From Ascidiella aspersa (lineage: Eukaryota): a DNA stretch of 64,000 bases. The translations under genes and the position numbers were made by a program. Each line of letters opens with the position of its first letter. The first letter of the stretch is position 1. The stretch spans positions 30,008,001 to 30,072,000 of the forward strand of contig OZ004611.1 of NCBI GenBank assembly GCA_963924565.1, given 5' to 3'. The notes beneath the pieces are model-generated. The model was not told the origin of the DNA, did not search any database, and worked only from the letters and a program-made list of their open reading frames with translations. This document shows positions 10,404-64,000 of this stretch, one piece after another.

Positions 10404-13400
10404 GTTGGTATTTAAACTGTATTTATTTGTTAGTAAGAAATGTGGTATAGATAGCACGTGATTATGGGTAGGTTTTTTAGATAATGAAAATAAATTAAGG
10501 TACACTATGCACTGATCTGCAGGGCATCTTAACAATGCATTTTGAAGTCAAAAAGGTGTAAATCGACATGCTCTTGATTATCACGTTTTGATAGGTATTC
10601 TGTTAATGTTACCAGAAAATATATTTTAGTGGTTACTTTGACTGAAATAATAAAACAACAAGATAAATGCGTGAATGCGGCGCATATCTATTCAAATCGC
10701 ATTTTCTTCGGTGAAATGTGTTTTTACGCCTGTTTGGTTTGGCGTGCGTGGGATCTTATTAGCTATGTCAGATAATTCTCATTATCTTCATATCCAAAAC
10801 CTTTTTTTGAATCGCGACCCTCTCTTATAGCAAATGACGCCATTACTATGCTCAAAAAAGCAAATTAGACGAAATCAAAACGTTCACTTAGTTACCTTTA
10901 GCTGTAATCCTAATATATTTTTTCATAAATTTACCCTTAAAAGTAAAACACGAGTAAGTAAAAAATTCTTTATATTAATTCAGCATCGAATCGACAGCGA
11001 TACGACCCTAGTATCGGACGATTTACCGATATATTTATTGGTAGGGTATCGGCTCCGATCCGATATTAACGCAAATCCTTTGCTGTTATCATTAATGGCG
11101 AGAAATGTGTTATTTAATTATTTATGTTACAATGTATCCAAATTGGTATAAAATTAATTATGTTCTCTGTGTTTTTGTCATTTTCTCAGGTTCAATTCTT
11201 CTGTTTTTGTTCGGTTTAACTAAAAAAAAAAATTCTTCAATACCAATAGAAAAAATCGTTTGAAAAACTTCAAAAAACACCAATTTGAAAAATTTCGAGA
11301 ACACAGCCCCTTAAAAACTTGGCGAAGATTACAGACAGCACTAGTAAAAGGAACGCGACAAGAATTCAGCAGCGTCCTATGCAGAGGTCTTGATCGGTAG
11401 GCAGCGAGATTTCTAATCCTCGCCAACGTTGACGCGATTCCGAGAAAGTGGAATTCAAGTGAAATCAAAGCAATTCGATTTCATCAAAACCGGTTGTTTA
11501 ATTTTGCTGATCCGATTAAGCGTCGTCAAATGTGCGCAGAAACATTGAACTGAGAGTGGAAAATATCGCCTTTGGCAGAAATTTGATCAGCGATATTTGA
11601 CGCGAAAAGCAGACGCTTCGCTTTCAAATTTTTTTTTCAGTTTTTTGCGGTGGTTAGAAATCGCCAGTAGCAAAAACTTATGAGTAAAACAAAACAAGGA
11701 TTTGACGGAATAGCAGTGTTTTCAAACTTATTCAGCATGCGGCACTTTAAGTAGAACAAAACACTGAACTATTTTATAAAATACGATAAAAATTGACAAA
11801 TAAAAGTCCATCAAGATGATGTCGGTTTACTCTACGTTTTTGGCTTTGAGAAATATTATGAAGCTACATTACAAATCTTTAGATAATGCATTAAAGTATA
11901 TACTTACATTATTTGTGCAAGTCTTACATCTTAATATTTCTGTTCAGTTTTAGAGTGTTAAACAGGTCCACCAGGTTAAAAGATTAAGAACCACAGACTT
12001 TTGGTTAATTTTGGCAAAATATTTAGTGTTAGACCCGTCAGGCTTAATGAACTACCAAGCTGAAGTGGCTACGTCATAATAAAGTTTCGCGCGTCGTCAA
12101 TTTTCGAAATCCCGTCGAGATGTTTCTGTCGCCGACGAGACTTATAATCCGTCCGCCATCTTGTTTTGTTTGACGTCATGTCGTCGGTCAAAGGTCAAAA
12201 ATTGCCGCCTCGAGTTTGCAATGGCAACAAAAAATTGTAGCCTGGAGATCTTTATCTTAATTATCTATTTACACATATTCAATATGATTCTTTCGGCTAA
12301 CAATGTAGATCTTCTGTATGGGCTTTGATATTCTTATCACGTCTTACTTACTACAAGCTCCAACCATTATGCTCTAAAGTTTATTGTCAGTCACTATGGA
12401 GAAAAGACGAAGACTATGTTAAGAATATGTAAAGAGTTATTCGAACCGTTTAAATGATACATACTTCTGTATGGGCTTTGATATTATTATTACGTCCTAT
12501 TACAACCGCCAACCATTATGCTCCAAAAATGTAGATACATTTGCTTCAATTTGTTTGTTTGAAATACTTACACCCTTATTTTTTACCGATTTCCAATGTC
12601 AAATGAAGTAAATGTTTATCTCGATTTTAAACGCACACGCATAAAATAAATGCGACTCTTTCGGCTCACAATGTAGAAAAACTTGCTCTATTTATTTGTT
12701 AGAAATACCTCACCCCTGAAGTCCTGAATATAGGGGATTTATACCGATTTCAAATGTTAAATTTTGAAAAATTACGATCTCTAATAATATCTTGAATAAA
12801 TCATTTTCTATCTCAAATCCAGATGATGAATGTTGTGATAAAAAAGTGCCAATAGTTTGGTAAAAAGCTTGCCGCTCAATTGTGTAATCGTATAACCTAT
12901 CACGATGCTAACAAATTACTAAATATTCGGAGATTTTCATAGATTCTCGATAGGAATGGACAACAACTGAAACGTTCATGTACAAAATGTGTATTCTGTG
13001 AACAGGCCCTTCTGGAGTCATACTGACAAACTATAACGACACCCATATATAGTCGGTTAACCTTTCCGAAGGAATCTTGTGCAGAATTTGACAAGCGCTT
13101 AATTTAGGATTTTTCCTTATATTATGTAATCTCTGTATAAACAAAATCGTGTTTCGTGTTATTTTCCTTAATTGATTTTAATCCAGATATTGCACATTTC
13201 CTTCCCCTAATCACGTTTTGGAAGATCCAATCGCTTTTCCATGTTTCTGCTTTTCTGCACGTTTCGCCTTTTTGAGACTATACCTTCGTCTCGGCACGAA
13301 TTTAATGACGTAGGCGACGAATTGCGGTTTTCAATGCAAATTCAATTCTCACTTCTCGGAAAAATCGTATGCGTTTTTTTTAAAGGAACCGAAAAAATCG

Positions 13401-16400
13401 TAAGTCATCAATATTGACCTAATGTACAATTTATCCTGTTAGTCAACTTATCTACAGAAATCAAGTCAAAATAACAATTAGTCACGAATAAGGTTTTAAA
13501 TTGTGTAAGTTTTCGACAGTAAAAAGGCAACAGCAAATGATTTTTATTTTTTTCCAACACATGGATAAAGTAGCATTTTGTCTTTTATAAACATACAACC
13601 TTCCATAATATCTGAGTTATATCCAGAGACGACGGCTTTTATCAAACAACAAAACAACACATTAGCTGAATCAAACTGTTTGAAAAGAAGGTGCTAAAAG
13701 AAAAATGTTGTTCGTTCTTTCGTTTTATAAAGGTAGTGTTTTGCATGTAATGAGAATTACTGGGTGAATTCCCCTATGTAAAACAATGTTTAGCTCAATG
13801 GTGAAAATAACGGCCCAAATAGACGTAAAAAGCGACATGCTTTATTGTTGATATCACTGATGATGGCATGAGCATTTGCCGAAACGTTTGAACAATAAAG
13901 CATGTCGCTTTTTACGTCTATTTGGGCCGTTATTTTCACCATTAAACCTATGAACACATCCGTATATAGTGTTCCAATGTTTAGCTGCGTTCCACAAAAT
14001 GCATTTTTCTATCTTTGCCAATTTTGCAAAACGAGAATTCGATTGTATAACAGAGTTTAAAATAGTGCGAGTAAAAACTGTGCCTTGTCTTTGTAAAAAT
14101 GCCATACAAGCAATATCTTAAGGTTGCCGATAACTTCTCAATTTTTGTTAAACTTTGCCAAAACTGCAATAACAAACCTTATCAGTAAAATTCTCCCAAA
14201 TTTCTATTAAGCAATCCACATTGAAAGCTAATTATTAGTAAAGTACGACCTTGGGTGGCATCAAAAGCGGTGATTAGCTTTGCAGGTTTCTCACCACAGA
14301 CACGCCAGAACTCTAAGGCTCACCACCCAGCAAATGTGTGGCTGGGAAATTATCGCTTTAGCTTCCGCATGCCTTGCAGTGCAAATTCTCATCCCGTTAA
14401 ATTTGAGTAGTTAGACCTAAAATATTTTATTTTTAACACTGATTTTAATTGTTACATTTCAAATTTCAAACTGTGCATTCCTATCATGTTGAAGATGAGT
14501 AAAGTGACATTCGAAACATTCAAAATATTACCTGATTCTATATAGGATCTACTATTCATACTTTGGTTTTCAAGCTGTTTGTTTATTATTTTAGTTTCAC
14601 AGTGTTTTTCAATATTTGTTTTTTACACTGTATCTTGGCAAGATGACATTTGTCCAGCGCTAAAATTATATTGAAATGAAAAACTAAATTGCCTGCGAAT
14701 AGTGTTCGATGCACAACATTTAAATAAAGTTGTTCCGACAGTCGTGTAAGATTGAATATGACTTTATACATAAATTTTTAGTCGTTTGACTTTCACTGGA
14801 GCACAATTTATGTAAATATATATCTGTGTAATTTGGAACACCTTTTGTAACCAGGAAGCCAGAATGTGTTATTTTTGGGAACAAGTTCTTACTGATGAAA
14901 GCTTATATTTCTTCATAATTTTCTTAAATAAAAATGTACTTCAATATTTATCACAAATTTTGAGTCATTAAGGCTACCTTTTGAATACTTGAACTTATTG
15001 AAAACAAATTGGTGCAGCAAAAGTATATTTTTTGGGTTGTAGGTAATATAACCTTGTATTGCTTTTTGATTATAGATTTAATACCAATTTATTGTAATAC
15101 TAAATGTTTGCAGATAAGGAGAAGCCCCGGCGAAAACGATTCTTTGACGACGACGACATGTTCTTTGAGGGTGGGAGTTTTCTGGATGGACTATATTCTT
15201 GTGGTTTAGACGAACAACCGTGTCCCGAATGGTAAGTGATAGCTAGGGGCGTCTACATTTTATACCGATTTACGACTCCTGACCGATTCCAATAGGGTTT
15301 AATTCCTATACCCGATATTCTGATAAAATAAGGTAAAACTCGAGATTTTTAAATCTTTTAAGGTTTCAAAACTAACATATAGCAAAGAATTAAACTTGCG
15401 AAAGTGGTTCTAAGTTCCTATGGAGTCGTAATATACTTTAAGCGAATTAAAAGACGTTCTTGAATTATTTTATTAATATTTTTTTGCGAAAATAAAATGA
15501 TCGTTGCTTCACGGCTTGATTTTGTCTTTAAATTTTACATTTCAACTCTTTTTATTACTTCCGTCGCAGCTCAACAATAGAACTTTTATAATTATCTCTT
15601 AGTATTACAAGTTTTAAGGAAAACATTACGTAGCGAGAATAGTAAAACCCACATAGAAGTAGGTAGCATTTTGAATGTTTCGAATATCATCAGTTGCTGC
15701 ACATATATAAAGAAATATTCGAAACGTTAAAATTGCTGGATACTTCTACATGGGAATTGATGTTTTTACTACGTTTAAATAAAACCTCCAGACATTATGC
15801 TTATTTTCAACGAACTTTCGCGTTCAGCGAACTAAAAGAAGTCTAAAATCAAAACTTATGCCTCCTTCAAAACCGGCTCACGCGCCCACGGGCTATTATT
15901 TGGATTTGAAATCGAGTCGGCCTCAGGTTAAAACAAAAGTTCGATTTGAGTTCGCCAATCTTTAAGCCGATCGCAAATAAGTGGCACGGCAGGATTGCGC
16001 AATACTGTTTTGCAAACAAATGAATTTTGAAATCAATTAAACTCTAGGCAAATTATTTGGAAAATAGCTTAAAATAGTATTTGCAAAATACGGTAATTCT
16101 AACTTATTATAAAAGTCCAAGTCATTTATTGAGTCCGCAAACACTAGAAAATGATTTCAACTCTCAATTTATTTGGATTGTTATTTAATTTTTATAGCAA
16201 GGTTACCGCTTTCAAAGCAATAAATTCACCGCAAATACAAGGTACTTTCGGAATACGTACCGACAATTTGAGTATTTGCAAAATACCTTGTTTTCACTTT
16301 ACAAAAAAAAACGAGTTAAAAAAAAGGAATGAATTCATACTTTACGTCGTTGGTTGTAAAACCATGTTTTAGTCCGATTTAATGTTTTATTTAATAAAAG

Positions 16401-19400
16401 TTTTTGCAAAACCTATAAATTAAACTTAAAACCTGGCCAAAATTATTTTAGTCGAACCGATTTCAATTCAGAATGAATTCGAATTTCAAATTATTAATCA
16501 TAACCAACAGCAAATATTATGTCTCGCAAAAAATTCGCTTGGAAAATATGAACAAAATGCTTCATAAGAAAAAAACTAACTGAACCAAAACTAAAGCAAG
16601 TAATCCGATTAGAAATTAGATTGAAATCAGCAATTTTAGGCATAATTACTCTGCTGAAAAATTATCCAGTCTCATCATTGTCAAAGACGTTTCACACAGA
16701 GAAAAACAAAAACACACAACGGCAGCCAAAGCTTACCAAAGCTTGCGACTATGTTTACTATTTAAGGCGTTGCCTTGCTAAGCACCTCTCGGATTTTAAG
16801 AGGCCGACGTGCCACTCTACTATTAGAAATTCCGTCAACGCTTGAAGCGGCGTTTGTTTTTCGGATTCCGTCCTTGTTTTGTTTATTTGTTTGCGCGATA
16901 AATTCGCCACAAACAGAGGCTTTTGGCGGAGAAAGGCCATAGGGACTTTTCAAGAACGGGGAAAGGGCGTTTTATTTTATTTCAAACAGTGGATGCCAAT
17001 CACTGCCTTCTTGCTATGTTAAAAATGTTGAAAATGAATAAAGAGATATTCAAAACTTCGAAATGCTACCTACTTGTCTATAGGCCTTTATATTATTACT
17101 ACATCTTACTCCAACCTTTAACCCTTATCTTAAGATTTATTGGAAATTGGAAACATTCACAAAATACTTCCTACTTCTGCATGGGCTTTGCTATTCATTC
17201 TGCGTCTAACTACAACCTCCAACCATTATGTTAAGAGTCATTAAAACGCTACCTACTTCGGTATGGGTTTTGACATTCTTATTACGTCTTACCACAACTT
17301 TTAACCATTATGCAGTGGTTCCAACTTTTTAAAGGTTATTAAGCTTTCGGGCCCTCAGATATTTTAACTCGGACCCTGACCAATGATTTTGCAAAATTAG
17401 TTGTAGTTCGGTACTTCAATGCTTTGCATAATTGGTTCAACGCCGATATAATCAAAGCTCATCAAAGTTGCCTTAAAACAGTGCTTCTTAACCTACGAGT
17501 CGCGACCCCACATTTGATTTGGTTGCATCACCGACGAGAGATTTAAGAACATTGCGGAGAAATTCAAACAACACATGGTCCAAATAAATTCAACCTATTT
17601 ACGCTAATGTAATGTCCTATGTTTTGTTTGCTTTCAAAAAGTTCAGTGAAGAGAATTGAGTCGCCAAAGATTTTTTGTTTTATTTATAGTATTTCGCAAA
17701 AAACAGGTTGATAAACACTGCCTTTAAACAAAGATACCAAATCGTCGTTAAGTCCCTTTACAGCCAACCTCGGGAAAAAAACGTAAATCGCAAGCGCGCA
17801 AATATTTTGCCAAAAAAAAAAAATTCCCGCCGATTGAACAAAAGCACAGCTCAAGACATATCAGCACTCGGCGAAATAAATCGCAATCCTAAAGAGCCGA
17901 ATTTCGAGAAAAACACGCCTCGCATGACGCAGGCCCGCTGCTTTAATTGTCGGTTTCCCGAGCGGGTTCAAAGCACCAGAAATCCCGCGGAATTCTGTTG
18001 GTCACCCGCACCAGCTGCTACCGGTTGAGAATGTGGCGCGCCCACTTTGACCGCGACCGCAAAAGAGGAAAAACAAAGTTTCCGAGACTGGTTTTGGAGG
18101 TGATCGGTGAAAAACAATGCTGTGGTCGCGTGCTGCAAACGTTTTTTTGTGTTTAAAAATATTGTAGGGATGCCGCAATCTATTAATTATTTCTGAGGGG
18201 TGCCGCTAGCCACAAAAGGCTGAGAAACACTTATATACAAAATACCGATCACAACACCCAAAATAAATTGCCCAACATGAAACACAGATTTCAGCAAAAT
18301 TAGCTGCATGGCCAGTGACAAATTCCCACTATTACTCACATAATCAACAGTGTCTGCCAGTGCTTTGGTGGAGTCTTCTCAGTTTTCCTGGACCTTCATT
18401 TTGTCGAACGCTTTTTTTGTGCGAAAGGCTTAACACACGAATTGCAAGGTTTTAATGTAAAGTCGTTTTAACACCTAATTTTTAACACGAATTTAATTTT
18501 AAGTTTTAACAGATTTTTTCCAGGCCCCTGTGTTATAAAAACGTAACAGTTATGTCTCGCAATTCTTACGTCACACTATGCAATCATTGCGTCCCAATGC
18601 GCAATCATTGCGTCAAAGGACCTTTTCTTACACTTTCGTTTACACTGGCTATACCAAGGCTTGTTTTAAAAAAAATTCATTACTACGTCACACTGTGTGC
18701 ATTATTACGTCACAGTGTCAGTTGTTTTTGGCAGGACAAGCTGGACGGGTCATCGTACGTGCAGCGCCTCTTGTGGTGGAGGTTGGGGCGTTTTGCGACG
18801 ATATTGCAGCAACCAGAGGGACGACCTGACCTGTGATGGAAAGGACACACGACTGGAGCGGTGCAACACGCACGAGTGTCCACAGTGGACGACCTGGACT
18901 GCAAATGGACTCTGCAGCAAGTCTTGTGGTGTCGGTCAGCAGATTTTCACCAGGTCAGCAAATTTATTTGGTCATTTTTTCGTCGAAGACGCGTATTGAC
19001 AAATTAAGTCCTTTTCATACTTTTATCAAATAAAATATTACTTTCAATGCGTTCCAGTTAAGCTCGTTTTTTGAAAGTCTGCTTTATTATTGACAGAACA
19101 ATGGAAAAATGTTGTAATAATTTTCACTTAATTCAATAAGTTTTCGCTTCAAGATGATCAATTCACTAGACAATACTTTGGTCAAACTTATCCTTTCAGA
19201 ATTATCAAATTCGGCCACAGTTTAAAAATTTCTTTGCAACACATCATGTCTAACATGGTATAACTAATACGTCATTCGTGTTCTGCATAGGTGTAACAAA
19301 ACTTGAAATAATTATCTAAAATATGATCGGAAAAGGCGTTTACCAAATATAAATAACAATTCATCAAAATAAAATTGCTTTTTGAAGATTTTTCTTTATA

Positions 19401-22400: not shown

Positions 22401-25400
22401 ATAAACGCGATACGATTCTACACGTTCCTGTGTGTGACGTAATAAAGACGGGCGCGAGCGGGGTCGCAAACTCCATAAGGACCTCGGTGCCAAAAGCAAC
22501 ACGTGGCTGCTTTGCATTCTTCCAATAACCTGAAGGCACGTTTTTGAAATCGCCTATATTGAGCAGTGGCCCTTTAAGGAAAGCAATAGTTTTTAGGATG
22601 CAAATTAAACGCTGGCAAAATCACGCAAATCGTTTTCTACTTGCGAAATTAACTGCGATCGTTCTACCGTACATAGAGCCCGCGTTGGGTCGTACTGAGG
22701 GCAGTCGAGCGGAAAATTAAACTCTACTATGAATATTATTTTGTAAGTACTTCTATCTGCACACACGGAGTGTTGTCGACATGCCTAATTACTAAATTAG
22801 TGCATGGGCATTAACTTTGGGTGTGGCGATTGATAATATATTTCCTTGGTATAAAACAACTTTCTTGTTTATACGCTTAACTGCAAGCGCAGTAATCGAA
22901 ATCGAAAGCCCTTTTTAAAAACCTTATAGTTTTAGCTAGGTCACCTTATCTTGTTTATTTTAGTAATGCCATTTTGGTCGTATTTTCGTTATTGTTCGCA
23001 GCACCAAGACTGCGCCAAAATCGCTTCAAAGTTTGGCCGACAAAAGGATAAGTAAAATTGATCTTCCGGCAACTTATTAAACTACCAACGTTTCCATCAC
23101 CTATTAGGGCATAAGTATGTGGCTTTCCAAACTTCATATTAATTTAATTTGTTTCAAAAAATATTCTTAATAGGCGAAAAACGAATTCCAGAGAAATAAA
23201 ATGTTTTCATGCCTAACACAATTTCAGACCATTGAAGTATTAGTCGGGAATCTAACCCACTGTAACTTTAGAAATTGCACACTGGACGGCGCAGCGGCGC
23301 ACGGTTGCGCGGGACAACGCGAGGAGGTACGCGCATGCGCACAACGTCAGGAGTGCACGCCTCACTGGAGCGAGTGGTCACGCCTGAGTGCGTGCACAAG
23401 AACATGTGGAGAGCTGGGAACTCAAAGAAGAGTGAGAAGTTGTGTGGGACAAACAAGACAAAAGGTAGATATTTTCTAACCTTAAATAAAGATAGTACAC
23501 CAAAAGCCACTGCAGACTTGCCGAAACTGTCGATTAATGATGCAACCAAGGCAAGCTAGAAAAACAACTAAAGCCTGCAGTGAGATTCGAACTCACGACC
23601 CTCCGGTCAAGCCGGGACCGTCGCTCAACCAACTGAGCTAGACAGGCTCAGAAAGGAAGCAAGTCGAGAAAAAAACATACGCCAATACTTGCAATAAAAG
23701 GTTTTAGAAGAGTAGTTCTGAAACTGGAGAAGTTATGTCACAACCTGGAAATTCCACACTGACCCCAGTTCGTTTGTGTTATTTTTTTGGTTTAAATTGT
23801 TGTTAGAATTGGACGAGTTTACAAGTTTCAATAGTTTACCAGTTTACTTTTATGTCAATGACATGACTTGAAATTGACTTGGTCTCATAATGAATTGACT
23901 GGGACTTGACCTGGGCAACCGGGACTTAAGTCATTTCAAAAAGACTTGTTTACAACACTGATGGTTATTAAGGTTTTTATGCTTTCCAGAGCTCGGTCTG
24001 CGTCGGTAGAAGTTCTGAGCTGGTCAGTTGTAACAGTGAGGTGCCCTGTCCGGCCAGACACGGACCCTGGTCGCCATGGGCCGGCTGCAACGACCTGGGC
24101 TGCGGGGACTGGGAAGAGGCCATACGGAACCGGACCTGTCTTGCTGAGTATTGCGAAAAAGGTAAGATAGCAGTTGTAGAGTTATTACGCCGTTTTTAAT
24201 ATATGGTAAACTGGGGCACAATGACTTGGTATTAACCGAAAGATTTCAGGCAAATTTCTAACATGAAAAAAGTAGTCGGGGCACAATACCTGGACTAAAA
24301 TCATTAAATAATCATTTGGGCAAAATGACTTGGAACTCTTAGTTAATTTAGTCAACCTAACGTAATTTAGTTGGATAAACAATTTCGTGGACAACGTTAA
24401 AAAATTCCACCGTATTATGTTTAGGCTAAAATATATTGTCCTGTCATTATCAACAGTCAGTTCCAACACAATATTAAAACGGTTGCCATCGTATTATAAA
24501 AAATTATAATGTTTACATGCTTTCCAAAATATTAATCATGATAGCCTTTAAATTTATTCTTAAACTATAGTAGTGTGATTTTTATGGTTTTGCGAAACAA
24601 GACGCTTTTTACTTTAAAGATGAGCTGGTGGAGCGAAGACTGTGTATGGGAGCGAAATGCGACGCCAACGAAACAATCAAGAAAATACAGCAAAATCGTG
24701 ACCTAAACAATGTGTAAGTTCATATTCTTAGTGTGTTCGTTACATAGGGGAGTCAATATGAATACAACCCTTAACTCAGTGGTTCTCAACCTTTAATGGC
24801 TTGCGGCAATCCTTAGAAATAATAAATAGATTAGGGTTTTTTTCCGTAGGTAAATCACTAGAATATCACAATAAACGGAATTGGAACAACCCACATATCA
24901 ACTCTGCACAACGTAGGAAGTTTTAATTGGATATATTCCGCTCTAATCTTACACAAAAGTTATAAGAGTTGGCAAAAATCAGATTCTCAAATATCTCTCG
25001 GCACCGCTAGAAATGGCACCCGCTTGAGAACCACTGACTTTACTGTTTAAAATTGTTTTGGTTTAAGGTAAAACTCTGTTTTAGATGTCATTATTTCTAT
25101 TATTTTTTTCTACAAAATAATGTCTGTATAGAATTTGTGAAATGCATGTTTGTTGATTACAACAAAAAGTATCAATGTTACATATTCCAGGTCTATAAAT
25201 CTAGGGCGAGGTTGTTATATTAGACAAGCAGTTCACAAACTTTGAAGTCTGACACTAAATCAATTATTGCCCGATACTATAGGGTTGTATCCGTGGCATA
25301 ATGTTAACCATCTGGATGTAATGAAACTTCTTCGGGCTAATATAACTATTTAATGACGTTCATCGGTTTCGTTTGGTCTTTTTGTGGTAGTGTAAATTAC

Positions 25401-28400: not shown

Positions 28401-31400
28401 AATACATGCCGTTCGTCTACTATGACTTTTCTTGAGCAAACAAAATTCGTGGCGATTTTACAAAAAGTTAAACAATATATATGCCACAAAGATGCATTGC
28501 AACCAAGAAAGTGAAAAAAAATGCAAAAACAACATATTTTATTTCCAGCAACTGCAATGGGGAGTTTACCGAAACCAGGAAGTGCTGGCAGCCCCTGTCC
28601 TGCCCGGAGTGGTCAACCTGGTCTAAGTGTGGTCAATGGTGCGAGAAGAAAAAAGGCGTATGCAGCCGCTCGCGATATTGTGTCGCCAGAAGGTACGGAT
28701 TAAAAAAATTGTACTAAAATGTAGAATGTAAACGTTTGTTTTCGTAAGTTTGGTTTCAGAAGCTAGTAGAACAAAAAAAGTTAATTTCTGTCAATCAGAT
28801 ACATTCAGACGCTTTAATTATAACTTTTTTATCGTAAGACTTATTAGGCTATAAAAATAAAAAAATATTTATTAAATTAAAAATGTGACATTTATTTTTC
28901 TGCTTTCCTTATTTTATCGCAACCAATTTTTTAATCATCTAAAAATAGAAACATTTGATTAATCAAAATTGAATACCAAGATAAAGCTAAATTGAGCCAA
29001 TACAAATTAATCCGAGCATTGCAGTTTTGTAATAGAGGCGAATCTATATACATACCCATTTTTTTCCTTAAGGTTGATAATAAATTAGAAGTAAAAATTT
29101 GAAATATTACTTCAAGGGGGATAAAAGTTATTCTTGAAAGAATTACAACCGTACATGGCGAATAAAATAACAGTAGTCAATATGTTAGAACAAATGTAAG
29201 GTTTTGGTTTTATGAGGCCCTTTATAAATGGATTAAAATTCATGAAAATGTAAAAAACACTGTTCTAACTTCCACTTGCGATTTCATTTGCTCTCACGAT
29301 TATGCGAAAATAATTATTTGAAACTTCCACACGACCGGACTTTGCAATTTATATATTACACGTCTTGTCACCACCTGTGCCCATTATGCTTGATAATTAC
29401 TTTTTCATTTCACACCAAATATCTTATGATTAGGGCAATTAAAAACCTTCTTTCAGATATGTATAGCATCACCAACTAAAACGTCATATAGTCATGTCAG
29501 AATGTCCAAGAACCCATAGGTTCCTCGTACCAGTTAGTACGGGTTTCAAATGACTATAATTTTGGCGTTTTGTGCTGTTTTGTCGGCAAATCTGCGTTTC
29601 AAAAATCGACATTACTGGCGTTTCTTTTCCCATCAAATTTTTCCCATGCGGCAGAGTACACTCAATGGCATTTTAATTGATACTCTCGGCGCTTTTGTTG
29701 TACCCACAAGGTACGTTTGGACGCGTGTTTGACCAGTCAATAACTATAATTGAATTTGTTAAACATTGCTTTTCAAATAATAAAGAGCGGTTCTACTTTG
29801 TCATTCCCATTATATTTTCTCATTACATTAGCCCTTATCACGAGGTGCGCCGAAACATGACTTAAGATTTTGGATGATAACCGTAAAACATAATGAGCAA
29901 CATAATATCAGCACCTAGAATATCGTTACATTTAGACAGAAATACTTGTCTGGATAACGCAATGATTGTGTCGCACTGTTTGGACAATAAAAATACGTTC
30001 TTGTGGTATATATTTGTTAATATATACCACAAAAACGTTTTTATAATATACTATGCCTGGTAGCAACAACATATGTATTGTTTGGATTTTCAAGTTTATG
30101 CTAGTCTGTTCTATGTAATAGCTTTAGAATATTCATTTTACGGTCGAATTTATATTGCATTAAGTCTAATATGCCAAACATGTGCTTGTAAATTGTCAAT
30201 ATAATAGCAACCGTTTCTATTATAATTATATGGAAATTAAAAAAACGGTTGTGATAACAACATATCGTGATTTCTTATCATTAAAATTAACTATTGTAGA
30301 AGCCCTGTCAAAAAAGTATTTTGTTAAACTGTCGAAAAGTTTTTTTTTGCATAAAGCAGTGGACATGTGGGTTATTAATTTCTAAGGGACAAAATTAACA
30401 ATTGTATAATGAAGGGTGATATCACAAATAATTCCGGGAGATATATTTGACCACTGAAAAGTTTATTCAGCTTTTGAACTGGATAAAATTTTAAAGCATG
30501 TTCGTACATTGATGTAAAAAAATGAACAAAGAGTTAGTCGAACCGTTGAAAATGTTAATTATTTCCACATTAATAATCCTACTATATCCAACTTAAACCT
30601 CCAACAACATGCTCCATATTTTTTAATCCATTAAGCTCTTATCGGGGGTAACCACACAGTAAAGATTGGCAACTACAGTCCTACAAATGATCCCGCCTAA
30701 ATTTGCGAAGAAAAAATCGTGTCAAACTATGAAGTGCCACATCCTTCGCTTTCACAACAGCTAGCCAAAAAACTTTTCTAAGAACTTAACGGCGCAGTAT
30801 AACGAGACCGTGTGCAGACCTTCCTTAACATTTATTGCAAAGGACTGCGCCAAGCGCAACTAGGGAAATTCCCCGGCGTGGACAATTTAGCCCATTCATA
30901 AAAATCTGAGGCACGATTTGGCAGCCGACCAATACCGCGTGATAGAGTTTCACATCGGGTGTTACAACACCTTTATGTTTGTTGCGCAATCACAATCAAT
31001 GGCGTCTTTGCCGCGGTCAGGCAAATATGTACTGTATACTTAGGTACACTATTAAAAGCAAGAAAATTCGAGTAACTCGGCAGCATCATAATGAAGAAAT
31101 TTCAATACGCACTCGTCATCACCAGTTAAAAAGTATTTGAATCACACCAGTTAGTAAAGTATTTGTATCACACCAGTTAATGTACTTGTATTGTGTCACA
31201 TTAACTGATGATGATATGCCTATAACTGCGTATCGAAATAAAGAGGTAGATAGGGTCTTCAACGTTTCGACTATTCCTGAAAATTAATATGGAGCTATAT
31301 ATATCTCTTATAAAGATGAAGAAACAACTTTAAGTTACAAGTTTAACTACAACCAAACTTAATATTAACAAGAGTGAACTGATTTGACTATTGTTTCAAA

Positions 31401-34400
31401 GTGTTGCCAAACTTTTTCCCGAGAAATATGCAGTCACTTAAAAAATTGAACTTTGACCAGCGGCAATATTGGACCACGCCTTGCATAGTTCACTTTTAAC
31501 GTTGCGGTAAAGTCCTGCTTATTTTTCGCAGGACGGGCGGGATTACAGGAGATTAGGTGAGTCCAAAGTCGGATAAGGCGTCTAGCGTTAGCGCCTTTTG
31601 CTAGCGCCTGCATAATGCTGATTTATGCTCGGTTTATTTTGCCAGCAACGGGCTTAGGCTTCTAGCGGGAGTTTTCCTAGAAAGTGCAAGCAAAGGTAGC
31701 CGTTTGATCGCTGAAATATTAGCTGCGCGGCCCGTTGAGCAAGTTAGTTAAATGTCAAGCAGATGTCTAATCGAAAACTTGGCTAGTGAAAATTTGCCGC
31801 AGGATTATATTGAAAAATCGGGTACACACATATCCGTGAAGAAAATTATCTAGGATATTCAATAAAGTTGACACAGTGTGAACAAACTTGGACGAAAATG
31901 AACTTCAAGCTAAGAAAAATCACGTAGAATGGATGTTAAAGGCCATACAGAAGTGGTATAATAAGAATATCAAAGCCCATACAGAAGTAGGTATCATTTT
32001 GAACGTTTCGAATAACTCTTTATTCATTTTCAACATAATGAGGGTCATGTTGAAAATGAATAAATAGTTATTCGAAACGTTCAAAATGCAACCTACTTCT
32101 GTATGGGCTTTGATATTCTTATTATGTCTTACTACAACCTCCAACCATTATGCTCCAAAGAAGTGGTATAGTTTGAGCGCTTCCATTAAATCTTCACATA
32201 TTTTTAATTTCGAGACGTTCGAAATATGCTACACTTCTGAAGAGACTATTTTTATAATAGCACCATAACGATGTTCTATTTTATCTTTTTTAGAAACAAA
32301 ACGGAGTTTCCATCTGTTCGGCCACAAGGTAAATTGCAAAGTGTTTTGTAATGCAAGTGCGAACATTATTTCTTTGAAATGTAATGTTTACAAATAACCT
32401 ATTACAACGTGAATAACCCCCTATAATTACTGCACTCAAATAGTTACCTTCTGGAATTAAAAAATTAAAAAATCGAATAAAATCCTCTATGCTAATAGGT
32501 TTTATGTAAACACAATACATCTGCTGTCGTTGGTTTTACACCTGAAGCCTGCACAGCAGAAGTACTATGTCTTTAGGCTTTTGTTATTAAGTCTTAGAAC
32601 AATCTAGAATCAAGAAACTTGAGACAATCCCTAAAAGTAACACAAAGCAAAAGGATTTATGAATTTTGACGGCCCAAATCGCAAAGCAACTCCAAATAAT
32701 CTTACAAGTATCAATATTTCGGCTAAACATAAACTCGTAGCCGTATATGACAAAAGCAAATATGATTCAACTTATCTTTAAAACGCAGTTGAAAGAATCG
32801 ACATCCAGCAATCCAACTCCACCGCTTTACCACGTGTCAGACAAACAGGGGAAACACCCATATCAAAACCCAACGGATCGCACGCGGGGGAATTACCAGA
32901 AGCGACACCCGTTGTTAATATAACAAACGCGTTGATCGAAAGTAGCGGCGCTTCCGGGTCTGTTTCTATGGCAACCGTACCCACTTATGACGCGTCGACT
33001 ACCGGTCGAACCGCGACGCTCGTGGAGGAAGGAATGACGCAATATCCGGAAACGATAGAAGGTGTGAGACCAGAAATAATGATGTTTTTTTTACTTGATT
33101 TATGATAGTTGGAGGTTTTAGTAAGAGGTAGTAGGAATATTAAGGCCCATATACAAGAAGCATTTCAACGTCATTATGCAATACAATTTTGTTGCGTTTT
33201 ATTTTATTTTACCAAACATTAAAAACGTAAAGCTTCAAGAATATTATCGCAGAGATTTTCTTTTCTAACAATCTGAAATGCCTACTATAGGAAGTTTTAA
33301 TCATTTTTTTATATATTCGTTGGCTTTGAGATTATGACGAATGCTATACAATGCAATTTTGTGGCGTTCTTCTATTTTAAGAACATTCAAAACGTTAAGT
33401 TAAATTGGTTCTCGCAGAAATTCTGGAACCGGATTATAAAAACCAGTGGCTTTATAATAGATTTGCTTAACTCCACAATTTGTTTGACTTTATATCAGTT
33501 TTAAAATGCGTATTACCGGAGGTTTCGGTAATTTTATATTATTTATTTTTAAATTGCTATAAAATACAATTTTGTTGCGCAGTTTCAATAATAAATGACA
33601 TACAAAAGTAAAGCTAATTTATTCTCACAGAGATTCTTGACCCGGATTTTAAATTTGTTTTGTTGCTTTTTTTGTTTCAAATGACATTCAAAACGTAAAT
33701 TTTCTATTTATTTTTGCAGAGATTCTTGACCCTGATGCTTGCAATGGGGGCTTCCCCAAGTCACGTGATCTGCGCAAGTGCGACGTGCTCCTGTGCGCCC
33801 CCGAGTGGAGCACGTGGTCGTCATGGTCGAGTTGTTCCAGCAGCTGTGGAAGCGGATACAGGGAAGCGCAGAGAACATGTAACCAGACACTGTTTGAAGG
33901 TGAGTTTTTACAGAATTTTATGAAAACTGACAATTTTTTTTTAATCTTATAAAATCTGACAAAGTTTTTGTGTAGAGTCAGGATTTTATGAAAACTCAGT
34001 AATTTCAATAAAAATTCTAAAGCCATTATACTCGTTAAGATGACAGAATTTGTTCGTAATTAGTAATGCTTGAACCATAAAAATCATGTTGCTGAAACCA
34101 TGCTACCTTAAACGACATCAGGAGTCTTCGATATTCCACTCAAACAATTCAACAAAAGTCTTATTTCACCCAGGTCTATATCACTGATCAGTTTCAAGCA
34201 AAATCCAATCTACGAGTAAAACTTCAGGCCTGTCACCTTAACCTAATGTCCTCGGCTAATTACCACATGCTTCTACATACTTTCAGCTGATTGCCTTGGT
34301 GAGTCGGTCAAGTACGAGCAATGTTCTGCTCTGCCCTGTTGGAGCGACTGGTCGGTGTACAGCCCTTGCACGAAATCTTGTGGTGGAGGGGGCAGGCAAA

Positions 34401-49694: not shown

Positions 49695-49769
49695 TTTTAT
49701 GTAGCTCAGATGTTAGAGCGACGGTCCCGGCTTGGCCGGGGGTCGTGAGTTCGAATCTCACCACAGGCT
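49695..49769 (+). pseudogene. tRNA-like repeat copy (more degenerate pieces at ~50440-50610 and ~51690-51720)
   Basis: tagctcagatgttagagcgacggtcccggcttggccgg...gtgagttcgaatctcac. Confidence 0.7.
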
Positions 49770-50068: not shown

Positions 50069-50100
50069 CTGAAGATGATACAAGTTCGTATCGAAACGTC
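50069..50100 (+). ncRNA. Hammerhead core motif (second copy 58313-58344, minus strand)
   Basis: CTGAAGA-T-GATAC(6 nt)GTATC-GAAACGTC; stem I is not evident in either copy. Confidence 0.45.
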
Positions 50101-51350: not shown

Positions 51351-53175
51351 TTCTGTTCATAGTGAGAGTCAAACACGATTAGTAAGAGGGTCAAGTTGTT
51401 GGAGTCCTGGATCTAATTGGCTGATATAAACGCTTGTCCTGTTTTCCTAGTTTGTTGTGGTGTTGCTTGGATTTTAAAGTCCCCCCCCCCCTTCGCGCCC
51501 TTATATTTCTCTAAGCACGCATGTCAATTATAATGTCAATATATTTTTAGGAAAATATTTCAATTAAAAATGTTTAGTATAAATAGTCAAACCAATATAC
51601 TATGGGTACCTTCTGAAAATCTGTTTTCGAAATCAGTTCGCCTCATCACGATTGCAGTGCAAGCAAGGTCAGCTAGAGAAAACCACAATTATGCGGTGAG
51701 GTTTGAACGAACGACCTCGGCCATACCATGACAACTAAATAATTTGCTTAGCATTTGAGCAAGTGAAAACAGATTTTCTTACAATTTAAACACAAAATTT
51801 GAAAGCAAGATGTAACAAATGACACAAATTTTACCATTTTTCGGTTTAAAGTCAACAAGGCGTAAGGCGTATTATTCATACTTCCAAAGTAAACAAATCA
51901 TAAAGTGCCTAATTTATACTTAATAAGGTAGTTTGCAGCCGTAATTCAACACCACAAGATCACAATTAAATTTATTTGCAAGTGGATAATTTACTTCAAT
52001 CCAGATATTTCAAATATATAAAAGCATGATTAGCAATACTCAAAGAAACAATTTATAGGTCATTTCGAAGAAAATGATTTCATAATAAGTTCAAGGAAGA
52101 CGTATTAAGAATATCAAAGCCCATACTGAAGTAGGAAGCATTTCGAACGTTTTGAATAAATCCTAAGATAATGGTTGGAGTGTATGGGAGACCAGAAAAT
52201 GTTTTGAAGGGCGGGGGTAAAAATTTGATGCAAAATACATATCATAACTAATTTGTAAAAAAGTTGTATTTATCCTAGAGTTGTGACAAGCTGGAAGTAA
52301 TTTGAATAAGGTGAGGATGACTTGCAAGTGTAATTTGTTCAATAAAATATGAAAAAATTATAAAACAATGCAATAGTAGTGTTTTACCTAAAAAAAATAA
52401 GCGTTTATAGAAAATAAGCGACGGGCCGGATGAAACTGCCTTGCCCGCGGGTTTTAGTTTGCCTAGGTCTGCACTAAGCTATAACTCGCGGCCTTATAGT
52501 AGAAGGGTACGGATCCAATGTTTGACAACAAGTACAATATTCATTTAGGGCGTTGGATAGAGGCAAATTGAGTTTATTCTGCCACATTGTCACGGATCAG
52601 CGCAACTTAGACTTCGTACCATGCCAAGACAGGGATGGTTCCAGGATTTTTGTTTGGGGGGATTATAAAAGTTTTCAGGGATGACCCATCAAACAATTAT
52701 TGTTGAAAACACTATATTGTTGTTTTTGAGCGAACTCGTGCGCAAATTGTAGCTGAAGCAGTCTATTTGCGCGAAGAGCAAAAAAATGCGTTTATTTGGT
52801 TTAAATTAACAAAAATATAAATGGGAACGTGAGGTAGTAGACACATAAAAGAGATTCTTATATTGCTTGAAAGTACAGCATTTTTCAAAAGACATTTAAA
52901 AAAAATTATAGGCTTTGAAAGACCTAAAATCGTCCACTAGACATGATTTGAATATAATTCGCACACAAAACAGTACAAATGCCATGTTCAACACAATAAG
53001 AAATAGCCTAACAAATTGGTTTAAAGTGGCACTTTCAAAACAAATAACTCATCTGTATATAACCTTATGTATGGGGTTCTTTTAAATTCCATTAGGCCTT
53101 CATGAACCCCCTAAAACTAGTTTACGAACCTCCAAGGGGTTCCATGGACACCAGTTTGAGAACTCCTGCCTTATG

Positions 53176-62454: not shown

Positions 62455-62529
62455 AGCCTGCAGTGAGGTTCGAACTCACGACCTCCGGTCAAGCCGGGAC
62501 CGTCGCTCTACCAACTGAGCTATGCAGGC
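62455..62529 (-). pseudogene. tRNA-like cloverleaf inside a dispersed repeat (best-preserved copy)
   Basis: GCCTGCA/TGCAGGC acceptor stem, GCTC/GAGC D stem, GTGAG-TTCGAAC-CTCAC T arm, A and B boxes. The anticodon arm is 19 nt and non-canonical. Confidence 0.75.
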
Positions 62530-63711: not shown

Positions 63712-64000
63712 CTTTAGACGTTTCCAGTATTGCAATGAATTAAGTCAATGACTTAAATCAAGCGCGGTTAAATCTTTGGTTTTAAATAACTTGACTTGGC
63801 GTAAGTCGAACTGGTACAATTACTTTACTTTGTACAAAATAAATAACTTGAACTTAGGTCAACGAGTCCAAAGACGTTTTGGAGCATAATTGTTGGAGGT
63901 TGTAGTAAGACGTAATAAGAATATTAAAGCCCATACAGAAGTAAAGGTATCATTTTGAACATGATGTTGAAAATGAACAAAGAGTTATTCATGACGTTCA

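What the first reader, a model, noticed from the sequence alone, without database searches (positions are those of the whole stretch)
31961..32157. Abundant ~100-150-nt repeat family with a U3-A8 variant hammerhead at its unit junction (candidate tiny retrozyme)
Seen: a dispersed repeat (copies at ~12310-12525, 15625-15800, 17020-17312, 30500-30615, 31961-32157, 33100-33170, 52085-52180, 63880-64000) has the consensus CATTATG-TTGAAAA-T-GAATAA(agag)TTATTC-GAAACGTT|CAAAATG-CTACCTACTTCTGTATGGGCTTTGATATTCTTATTACGTCTTACTACAACCTCCAAC-CATTATG. The unit end (CCAACCATTATG) is also the 5' strand of stem I, and end-to-head junctions are visible at ~17221-17250 and ~52140-52180, giving a monomer of about 103 nt. 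At 31961-32122 two copies form a head-to-head palindrome. Known: the hammerhead core is C3UGANG8A...GAAA...UH, C3-G8 pair in the active fold, and U3-A8 is a tolerated compensatory variant. Minimal type-I hammerheads with palindromic loopless stem III occur in Penelope-like elements and animal retrozymes and are thought to act as dimers. Inference: UUGAAAA is exactly the U3/A8 double change and recurs in several copies (17028, 32050, the minus-strand partner, 63968), so a CUGANGA-based search would miss the family. It may be an unusually small non-autonomous ribozyme-processed retroelement that makes circular RNA.
Basis: partly seen in the sequence, partly recalled or inferred. Interest (0 to 1): 0.85.

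Follow-up and report, generated by a model that had tools for sequence, protein, structure and literature searches.

The report
Truncated Penelope-like elements with variant hammerhead
The repeat is the roughly 115-base end piece of an intact-looking Penelope-like retrotransposon, scattered over 1,700 times in this animal genome; it carries a variant (U3-A8) of that family's minimal hammerhead motif that was already described in 2014, and it is not a tiny circular-RNA 'retrozyme'.

Summary
The repeat family is real: about 12 copies lie in the window and at least 1,703 in the 308.6-Mb genome. It is not a self-contained 100-150-nt retrozyme. The unit is the first ~110 nt (5' leader, motif, ORF start, 'tail') of a 2,666-bp tandem Penelope-like element (PLE). 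That element has an intact 836-aa ORF with reverse transcriptase and C-terminal GIY-YIG domains. Short copies show the PLE insertion signature:
- exact 12-13-bp target-site duplications;
- an upstream inverted 5'-truncated copy;
- a 30-34-nt tail at one end only.

The window copy at 31961-32158 has all three.

The U3-A8 motif is real and fixed in the family (U3A8 1,703; C3A8 42; U3G8 8; C3G8 0). It sits where sister PLE families in this genome carry canonical C3-G8 minimal hammerheads, with a different but still pairing helix II. This PLE min-hammerhead, including the U3-A8 core, was published in 2014 for Schistosoma Cercyon.

Most copies end at one base, 25 nt downstream of the last base of a TATA box, and often carry an extra G. 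I read that base as a capped transcription start. No excess of 5' ends marks the predicted cleavage site.

The parts
31949..31960 (.). Left target-site duplication (TSD), 12 bp (AGAAGTGGTATA)
   Evidence: Identical 12-mer at 32159-32170.
31961..32036 (-). Upstream inverted copy of the PLE terminal unit (reverse complement of unit positions 1-76). It lacks the 3' tail.
   Evidence: 96% identical to the sense arm. The same architecture is seen in most of 30 genomic copies, with the outer end fixed near unit position 80.
32002..32033 (-). U3-A8 min-hammerhead motif on the inverted arm
   Evidence: Pattern match at 32004-32033 on the minus strand.
32037..32046 (.). 10-nt filler between the two arms
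   Evidence: Read directly. Fillers differ between copies.
32047..32158 (+). Sense copy of the PLE terminal unit: from the discrete 5' end (ATGTTG..) to the 3' end (..GCTCCAA)
   Evidence: Matches L052:2882-2993, the start of the intact PLE ORF copy.
32050..32081 (+). U3-A8 min-hammerhead motif: U3UGAAAA9, an extra U, 6-bp helix II, GAAA, C15.2-G16.2, U16.1, H17. The predicted cleavage site lies between 32081 and 32082.
   Evidence: Homologous position to the canonical C3-G8 motifs of sister PLE families.
32056..32158 (+). Decayed start of the PLE ORF. The ATG is A9-U-G10.1 of the motif. This copy has a stop at codon 4.
   Evidence: (MNK*LFETF..), compared with the intact MNKELFETS.. in L052.
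32127..32158 (+). The PLE 'tail': about 32 AC-rich nt present on the sense arm only
   Evidence: Corresponds to the 30-40-nt tail of PLEs (PMC8557442, PMC11167929).
32159..32170 (.). Right target-site duplication
12311..12525 (+). Two older copies. The first runs about 40 nt past the tail into PLE ORF sequence (..FIVSHYGEK..).
14484..14565 (+). Older diverged copy (74% identity) with a U3/G8 core (TTGAAGA)
15636..15801 (.). Old head-to-head pair of the same family
17025..17313 (+). Three old partial copies in tandem. The junctions lack the 5' hammerhead core.
   Evidence: TRF finds no array here because the copies are too diverged.
30519..30616 (+). Old diverged copy (70% identity)
33102..33160 (-). 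Old partial copy
52089..52159 (-). Old partial copy with a tandem-type junction (..CCATTATC|TTAGGA..)
63880..64000 (.). Young head-to-head insertion cut by the window end. Here the inverted arm carries the tail.

Best explanation
The repeat is the terminal unit of an autonomous, canonical (C-terminal endonuclease) Penelope-like element (PLE). The parent is a 2,666-bp tandem unit made of four parts. First, a 146-nt 3'UTR holding a TATA box. Second, a discrete RNA 5' end 25 nt downstream of the last base of that box. Third, the minimal hammerhead motif, whose A9-U-G10.1 is the ORF start codon. Fourth, an 836-aa RT + GIY-YIG ORF. Reverse transcription starts at two internal sites, about 71 and 101-105 nt into the ORF. 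The 30-34 nt between those sites is the one-sided 'tail'. Both strands of the cut target prime synthesis. This gives a sense copy with the tail, an upstream inverted 5'-truncated copy without it, and 12-13-bp target-site duplications.

Shown: the parent element, the insertion anatomy, the fixed U3-A8 core and its homology to C3-G8 motifs of sister families.

Inferred: most of the ~1,700 copies are only ~115 nt long because the RT start site lies close to the capped 5' end of the PLE mRNA. A cDNA from that site to the cap is then a complete 'mini' copy. The motif is a true member of the PLE min-hammerhead class. Whether the U3-A8 version cleaves is not shown. I put appreciable in-vivo self-cleavage at about 35%.
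For: 1. Parent element. Tandem copies have a ~2,666-2,671-bp spacing (exactly 2,666 bp in L052). L052:2891-5398 is an intact 836-aa ORF with RVT_1 (E 2e-9) and GIY-YIG (E 7e-4, 20.2 bits, just under Pfam's 22.6-bit curated cut-off). Two copies match the full 836 aa with no stop, and three more are open over residues 1-797.

2. PLE insertion signature. 21 of 30 young copies have an exact duplication of 9-14 bp, mostly 12-13 bp. In 8 copies the duplication abuts the fixed outer end of the inverted arm exactly, and in 7 more it overlaps it by 2-7 nt. The inner end of the arm varies, and the tail is on one arm only. This matches the published PLE anatomy and the two internal RT start sites of Poseidon PAc (PMC8557442, PMC11167929). 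The distance of 26 nt from the ATG to the cut site equals that reported for PAc.

3. Motif. [quoted passage not shown] U3-A8 stands where three canonical sister families here, and a fourth looser CTGAAGA match (59240-59273), have C3-G8. Helix II differs between families but stays paired. Counts are U3A8 1,703, C3A8 42, U3G8 8 and C3G8 0.

4. Discrete 5' end. Of 1,270 copies, 171 continue into the parent sequence and ~1,100 stop at the A. The base before that A is G in 527 copies (48%, against ~18% background), while the parent has T there. A TATA box lies at -32..-25. One long copy starts with G+ATGTTG, and at ORF residue ~229 it jumps to a second G+ATGTTG.
Against: The extra G could reflect a junction or microhomology preference rather than a cap. 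T and C at that position are confounded by head-to-head joints.

Evidence against an active ribozyme:
- Helix I in the parent context has only 2 contiguous pairs.
- Helix II is five A-U pairs plus one G-C pair.
- The MFE fold does not form the hammerhead (-5.1 kcal/mol, z +1.3).
- There is no excess of copy 5' ends at the predicted cut site. 1,262 copies read through it and 145 have a purine before it. Most of those 145 have A, which probably reflects a CA-insertion variant and one large array; I did not inspect them.
- Published PLE min-HHRs cleave poorly in vitro, and HHR mutants do not affect PAc insertion in vitro.

The GIY-YIG Pfam score is below the curated cut-off. The call rests also on the domain's position and on homologues named GIY-YIG endonuclease.
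Confidence: 0.85

Rival explanations
1. One reading: a 100-150-nt non-autonomous retrozyme. Tandem units place a U3-A8 hammerhead at each junction, and transcripts self-cleave and circularise.
For: Old tandem arrays of the unit exist (window 17025-17313; L020 with period 88). Animal non-LTR retrozymes are reported to derive from PLE pLTRs (bioRxiv 10.64898/2026.07.22.740005). The core motif is real.
Against: The tandem junctions lack TTGAAAA and the 5' strand of helix II. The junction needed for the proposed stem I is at chance level, with 1 exact match and 29 at one mismatch or fewer. About 87% of copies are solo or head-to-head insertions with TSDs that end at one fixed base. No copies cluster with 5' ends at the cut site. 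A transcript of the palindromic copies would fold as a perfect hairpin.
Confidence: 0.04
2. The short copies are solo pLTRs. Full-length insertions (unit-ORF-3'UTR-unit) later lost their interior by recombination between the two 115-bp direct repeats.
For: A full-length, more-than-unit insertion would carry the unit at both ends. Such a deletion leaves TSD-unit-TSD, as seen in L010, L012 and L019.
Against: It would require more than 1,000 independent deletions among copies still 95-98% identical. It explains neither the extra G at the 5' end, nor the inverted arms of variable inner length that abut the TSD, nor the G-marked end-to-end template jump in L057/L059.
Confidence: 0.08
3. A foldback/MITE-type DNA transposon: the palindrome is a pair of terminal inverted repeats moved by cut-and-paste.
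For: Palindromic copies flanked by direct duplications.
Against: The two ends differ: one has a 30-34-nt tail and the other does not. The inverted arm ranges from 11 to ~80 nt or is absent. TSD length varies from 9 to 14 bp. The sequence is the ORF start of an RT/GIY-YIG element.
Confidence: 0.01
4. The hammerhead-like string is a catalytically dead relic. On this view it is kept because it overlaps the transcription start, the 5' leader, the start codon and the N-terminal codons, or an RT-binding structure, and not for cleavage.
For: Weak helices I and II, and no HHR in the MFE fold. No cut-site 5' ends in the genomic record. PAc HHR mutants still insert in vitro, and Naiad PLEs thrive without an HHR. 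Cleavage at either copy of the site would separate the cap and AUG, or the RT start site, from the ORF (inference).
Against: The 5' core (positions 3-8) lies upstream of the ATG, so coding cannot explain it. The change is the Watson-Crick-preserving double change, with no C3A8 or U3G8 lineage of any size. Helix II stays paired across families despite different encoded residues.
Confidence: 0.5

Closest known systems
Minimal hammerheads of metazoan Penelope-like elements, including the U3-A8 core variant of Schistosoma mansoni Cercyon (Cervera & de la Pena 2014, PMC4209133)
   Same: Located in the PLE terminal repeat. Type I with no real helix III, and a palindromic 15.2-16.2. Extra nucleotide between 9 and 10.1, G10.1-C11.1, and a long helix II. 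U3-A8 replaces C3-G8. Thousands of mostly single motifs from truncated PLEs, plus pairs on opposite strands 100-700 bp apart.
   Different: A different host genome and element. Helix I is shorter here (2 contiguous pairs, like the D. virilis variant). The family is very homogeneous (517 identical 32-mers), whereas the paper stresses extreme variability except in D. virilis.
Poseidon PAc of Anolis carolinensis: internal initiation of reverse transcription (Frangieh et al. 2024, PMC11167929)
   Same: The ORF starts at helix II of the HHR, with C3 and G8 upstream of the ATG. The cut site is 26 nt after the start codon. There are two RT start sites a tail-length apart inside the first ~110 nt of the ORF. 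Both target strands are cleaved and extended.
   Different: The start sites here are about +71 and +101-105, against 111-118 in PAc. The core here is U3-A8. The evidence here comes from genomic copies only, not from biochemistry.
Animal non-LTR retrozymes (Cervera & de la Pena 2020, PMC7229834; Li et al. 2026 preprint, 10.64898/2026.07.22.740005)
   Same: AT-rich, PLE-related, short non-coding copies. Some tandem arrays exist.
   Different: Retrozymes are 150-450-bp head-to-tail repeats, each with a complete canonical type I HHR with loop-loop contacts, and they are expressed as circles. Here the arrays lack the 5' core, and most copies are solo or head-to-head insertions.
Extra 5' G and twin priming in LINE-1 insertions (from my own knowledge, not checked here)
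   Same: An untemplated G at the 5' end of complete copies, usually ascribed to copying of the cap. Inverted 5' segments arise from priming on the second target strand.
   Different: A different RT/EN class. Here the second priming site is at a fixed position on the RNA rather than a variable one.

Membership tests
Penelope-like element, canonical EN+ type | Single ORF with a reverse transcriptase followed by a C-terminal GIY-YIG endonuclease | tested here: met
   L052:2891-5398 is 836 aa with no stop. RVT_1 matches residues 403-550 (E 2e-9) and GIY-YIG matches residues 739-776 (E 7e-4, slightly below the curated cut-off). Homologues carry RVT_1 and are named GIY-YIG endonuclease by one source.
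Penelope-like element, canonical EN+ type | Partial tandem (pLTR) organisation | tested here: met
   Tandem copies with a 2,666-2,671-bp period at three loci. The unit is present at the ORF start and again after the 3'UTR.
Penelope-like element, canonical EN+ type | Upstream inverted 5'-truncated copy, and a 30-40-nt tail at one end only | tested here: met
   Seen in most of 30 loci. The tail is 30-34 nt.
PLE minimal hammerhead (min-HHR) | Core boxes CUGANGA (or the U3-A8 covariant), GAAA, and U16.1-H17 | tested here: met
   UUGAAAA .. GAAA-CG-U-[C/U]. Both H17 = C and H17 = U are allowed.
PLE minimal hammerhead (min-HHR) | Unpaired nucleotide between 9 and 10.1; G10.1-C11.1; long helix II; palindromic 15.2-16.2 | tested here: met
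   Extra U. G-C closing pair. 6-bp helix II. C15.2-G16.2.
PLE minimal hammerhead (min-HHR) | Helix I of about 4-5 bp | tested here: inconclusive
   In the parent context only G-C and U-A are contiguous, with one more pair after a mismatch. The published D. virilis variant has 2 bp.
PLE minimal hammerhead (min-HHR) | Mg2+-dependent self-cleavage, as a dimer | not testable with these tools
   No RNA data. The genomic 5' ends give no sign of cleavage.
Animal non-LTR retrozyme | Head-to-tail tandem repeats, each monomer holding a complete type I hammerhead | tested here: not met
The array junctions lack the 5' core and half of helix II.
Animal non-LTR retrozyme | Expression as monomeric linear and circular RNA | not testable with these tools
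MITE / foldback DNA transposon | Symmetric terminal inverted repeats with a fixed-length TSD | tested here: not met
   Asymmetric ends, a variable or absent inverted arm, and TSDs of 9-14 bp.

The most novel reading that the evidence does not exclude
The ~115-nt copies are complete cDNAs that run from the PLE's internal reverse-transcription start site to the capped 5' end of its mRNA. The RT recognition site lies only ~100 nt from the transcription start, so the element throws off about ten times more 'cap-to-start-site' mini-copies than long copies, and it also joins them end to end by template jumps. On this reading the genome itself records the PLE transcription start (a TATA box at -32..-25 and an extra G) and both RT initiation sites. 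It would also explain why single min-hammerhead motifs litter animal genomes.
Probability: 0.5. Interest if true: 0.45.

Novelty: new member of a known kind. Interest (0 to 1): 0.33.

Why it matters
The finding as written would have been a new ribozyme variant in a new, tiny class of retroelement. It is neither. It is a clean, young and abundant example of a known class: PLE minimal hammerheads, U3-A8 version.

Its value is as material. The family is homogeneous and has intact autonomous copies. Sister families in the same genome carry the C3-G8 core, which gives a natural pair for testing whether U3-A8 min-hammerheads cleave.

The sharply defined copy ends give DNA-level support, in a second and distant species, for the internal RT initiation and two-strand priming shown in vitro for one lizard PLE. 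They also suggest where PLE transcripts start.

Tried and rejected
1. Rfam. No hammerhead hit at the gathering threshold in the window. None at E<=10 on 31900-32250, where only hairpin-type miRNA models matched because of the palindrome. This is expected for a loopless min-HHR with a variant core, so it is not evidence against the motif.
2. A genome-wide RF00163 scan scored only 74 of 39,749 candidates and found nothing, so it is uninformative.
No RNA evidence was obtained.
4. TRF on 16900-17450 found no array because the copies are too diverged.
5. The protein homologue search gave only unnamed relatives at 50% identity or less. The host organism and the exact PLE clade were not established. 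I see no Cx2-5CxxC linker ahead of the GIY-YIG domain, which hints at the Penelope/Poseidon type, but that rests on reading the sequence only.
6. I looked for another ribozyme that could create the discrete 5' end at ATGTTG. There is no GAAA box upstream of it and no Rfam hit, so I rejected this in favour of a transcription start.
7. I tested whether copies start at the hammerhead cut site and found no excess.
Later checks used pattern counts and small fetched pieces.
Full report
**1. The observation**

The window is AT-rich (about 36% GC). It belongs to a 308.6-Mb assembly of 75 contigs.

The focal locus is a head-to-head pair. The 79-nt arms are 96% identical, and 31961-32158 folds as one hairpin of -108.6 kcal/mol with z -21.8.

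Genome-wide, the first-pass search gave 1,723 candidates, and the 40 that were scored were 95-98% identical. Exact pattern counts are 517 for the 32-nt motif and 1,703 for its first 16 nt. The reversed-pattern controls gave 0 and 10. The family and the motif are therefore real.

**2. Anatomy of a copy**

I oriented 30 loci with 1.5-kb flanks and found a constant layout:
- a target-site duplication (TSD);
- an inverted arm whose outer end is fixed (it begins CGTAATAAGAAT, the complement of unit position ~80) and whose inner end varies, so the arm is 11 to ~80 nt long or absent;
- a short filler, or more parent sequence;
- a sense unit that starts ATGTTGAAAATG and ends ..CCATTATGCTCC plus 0-3 A and sometimes G;
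- the second TSD.

Twenty-one of the 30 copies have an exact duplication of 9-14 bp, mostly 12-13 bp. In 8 copies the left duplication abuts the outer end of the arm exactly, and in 7 more it overlaps it by 2-7 nt.

The last 30-34 nt of the sense unit are missing from the inverted arm. In the copy at 63880-64000 the inverted arm carries them instead.

The window copy fits this layout:
- TSD AGAAGTGGTATA at 31949-31960 and 32159-32170;
- inverted arm 31961-32036;
- filler 32037-32046;
- sense unit 32047-32158.

Variable-length TSDs, asymmetric ends and truncated inverted arms exclude a cut-and-paste transposon with terminal inverted repeats.

**3. The parent element**

Some copies continue upstream into a shared sequence. 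Searching the genome with that sequence found tandem copies spaced 2,666-2,671 bp apart at three loci.

In L052 the unit at 2882 opens a stop-free frame. [quoted passage not shown] Two genomic copies match the full 836 aa without a stop. Three more are open over residues 1-797.

This is a canonical endonuclease-bearing Penelope-like element (PLE). The repeat in question is its first ~110 nt, which recurs after the 146-nt 3'UTR of each tandem unit.

The layout in section 2 matches what is published for PLEs: partial tandems, an adjacent inverted 5'-truncated copy, and a 30-40-nt tail at one end (PMC8557442). It also matches what was shown in vitro for Poseidon PAc: both target strands are cleaved and extended, and reverse transcription starts at two internal sites a tail-length apart just inside the ORF (PMC11167929).

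With the A of ATGTTG as position 1, the landmarks are:
- core positions 3-9 at 4-10;
- ORF ATG at 10-12;
- GAAACGT at 28-34, with H17 at 35;
- the first 3' end at position 80;
- the second 3' end at positions 110-114.

The distance from the ATG to the predicted cut site is 26 nt, the figure reported for PAc.

**4. The hammerhead motif**

The string reads U3-U-G-A-A-A8-A9, an extra U, helix II GAAUAA/UUAUUC with loop AGAG, then G12-A-A, A15.1-C15.2-G16.2-U16.1, and H17 = C or U.

Sister PLE families in this genome carry the canonical core at the homologous place:
- the 44%-identical ORF family (L055), with CTGATGA, an extra T and helix II GGCAA/TTGCC;
- window 13857, the same family;
- window 50069 and 58344(-), with CTGAAGA, an extra T and helix II GATAC/GTATC;
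- the 29%-identical ORF family (L056);
- a looser CTGAAGA match at window 59240-59273 (-), whose helix-III segment is atypical.

Canonical patterns occur 5 times in the window, against 0.09 expected by chance.

In three families the extra U completes the start codon (A9-U-G10.1). The 5' core therefore lies outside the ORF, and coding cannot explain its conservation. Helix II differs in sequence and in encoded residues but stays paired.

In the focal family the counts are U3A8 1,703, C3A8 42, U3G8 8 and C3G8 0. The master copies therefore carry the double change.

All of this fits the published description of metazoan PLE min-hammerheads. That paper explicitly reports a U3-A8 covariant core in S. 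mansoni Cercyon with about 1,300 hits. It also reports the extra nucleotide, G10.1-C11.1, the palindromic 15.2-16.2, the long helix II, the short helix I, single motifs from truncated PLEs, and paired motifs on opposite strands (PMC4209133). The motif is real but already known as a kind.

**5. What does not hold**

That junction is found once exactly and 29 times at one mismatch or fewer. Random 5-mers in front of ~1,500 copies would give about the same number.

Real tandem arrays (window 17025-17313 and 52089-52159; L020 with period 88) join ..CCATTAT[CG] to TTAAGA..TTATTCGAAACG. This skips the 5' core and the 5' strand of helix II.

In the parent context helix I has two contiguous pairs. The region does not fold as a hammerhead (MFE -5.1 kcal/mol, z +1.3).

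If cleaved RNA served as a template, copies should begin at the C after GAAACGTY. Instead 1,262 copies read through that point. Another 145 have a purine before it, nearly all A. That pattern fits the CA-insertion variant seen in older arrays and a ~50-kb-period array on contig 7, though I did not inspect those copies.

There is therefore no DNA-level sign of cleavage and no support for a retrozyme life cycle.

**6. Why so many copies are only ~115 nt (inference)**

There are 1,270 copies with the exact 19-nt 5' end. Of these, 171 continue into the parent sequence (TCTCT before the ATG). The rest stop at the A.

The base before that A is G in 527 copies, A in 109, C in 142 and T in 492. The T count includes the 171 parent-type copies and also perfect head-to-head joints. 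G is thus about 48% of non-parent copies, against ~18% genomic G, while the parent has T at that position.

A TATATATA box lies at -32..-25 from that A.

One long copy on contig 2 starts G+ATGTTG after unrelated DNA. At ORF residue ~229 it jumps to a second G+ATGTTG..tail. This looks like an end-to-end template switch that copied an extra G each time.

I read the A as a capped Pol II start. The mini-copies would then be cDNAs from the internal RT start site to that cap. The rival reading, solo pLTRs formed by deletion, is less likely but not excluded.

**7. Limits**

The host species and the PLE clade are not established. Catalysis is untested.

The scan had already noted PLE-type hammerhead insertions elsewhere in this genome and at 13797-13943 of this window. 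I confirmed the canonical motif at 13857.

**8. Verdict**

This is a new member of a known kind: truncated insertions of an active-looking PLE carrying the U3-A8 min-hammerhead. The retrozyme interpretation is not supported. The cap-to-start-site reading of the mini-copies is the only part with some novelty.

Noticed in passing
window 13797-13943: A head-to-head insertion of a different PLE family. A canonical C3-G8 min-hammerhead (CTGATGA, extra T, helix II GGCA/TGCC, GAAACGTT) sits at the centre of a long inverted repeat. This is the same family as the 44%-identical ORF at L055.
   Followed up: partly
window 50069-50100 (+), 58313-58344 (-), 59240-59273 (-): Further canonical-core PLE min-hammerheads from two other families. 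CTGANGA..GAAACG occurs 5 times in the window against 0.09 expected.
   Followed up: partly
window 14484-14565: An old relative of the focal unit with a U3/G8 (wobble) core, TTGAAGA. It may be an intermediate state between C3-G8 and U3-A8. Only 8 such 16-mers exist genome-wide.
   Followed up: partly
L005-L008 and L021 (contig ends: C5 at 33 kb, C3 at 38 kb and 39.26 Mb, C2 at 0.45 and 0.83 Mb): Five copies share identical flanks on both sides and lie near contig ends. Here the PLE insertion sits inside a larger, probably subterminal, duplicated segment.
   Followed up: no
G000 contig 7, about 2.42-3.90 Mb: About 25 copies with the same variant (A before CAAAATGCAACC), all on the minus strand and spaced roughly 45-60 kb apart. 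This points to a large tandem or segmental array that carries one PLE fragment per unit.
   Followed up: no
L017:1080-1110 (parent 3'UTR, antisense): The PLE 3'UTR contains an inverted copy of its own 5' end (..ATCAG ATGTTGAAAAAA). It resembles the fillers ending in CAG that precede several short copies (L003, L018, L024, L025).
   Followed up: no
L057/L059 (G000 C2:23391560-23392470, minus strand): A composite copy: G + unit + ORF residues 1-229, then G + unit with tail. It looks like an end-to-end template jump with an extra G at each RNA 5' end.
   Followed up: partly
window 62455-62529 (-), 23572-23647 (-), 49700-49763 (+): Three tRNA matches above the Rfam gathering score.
   Followed up: no
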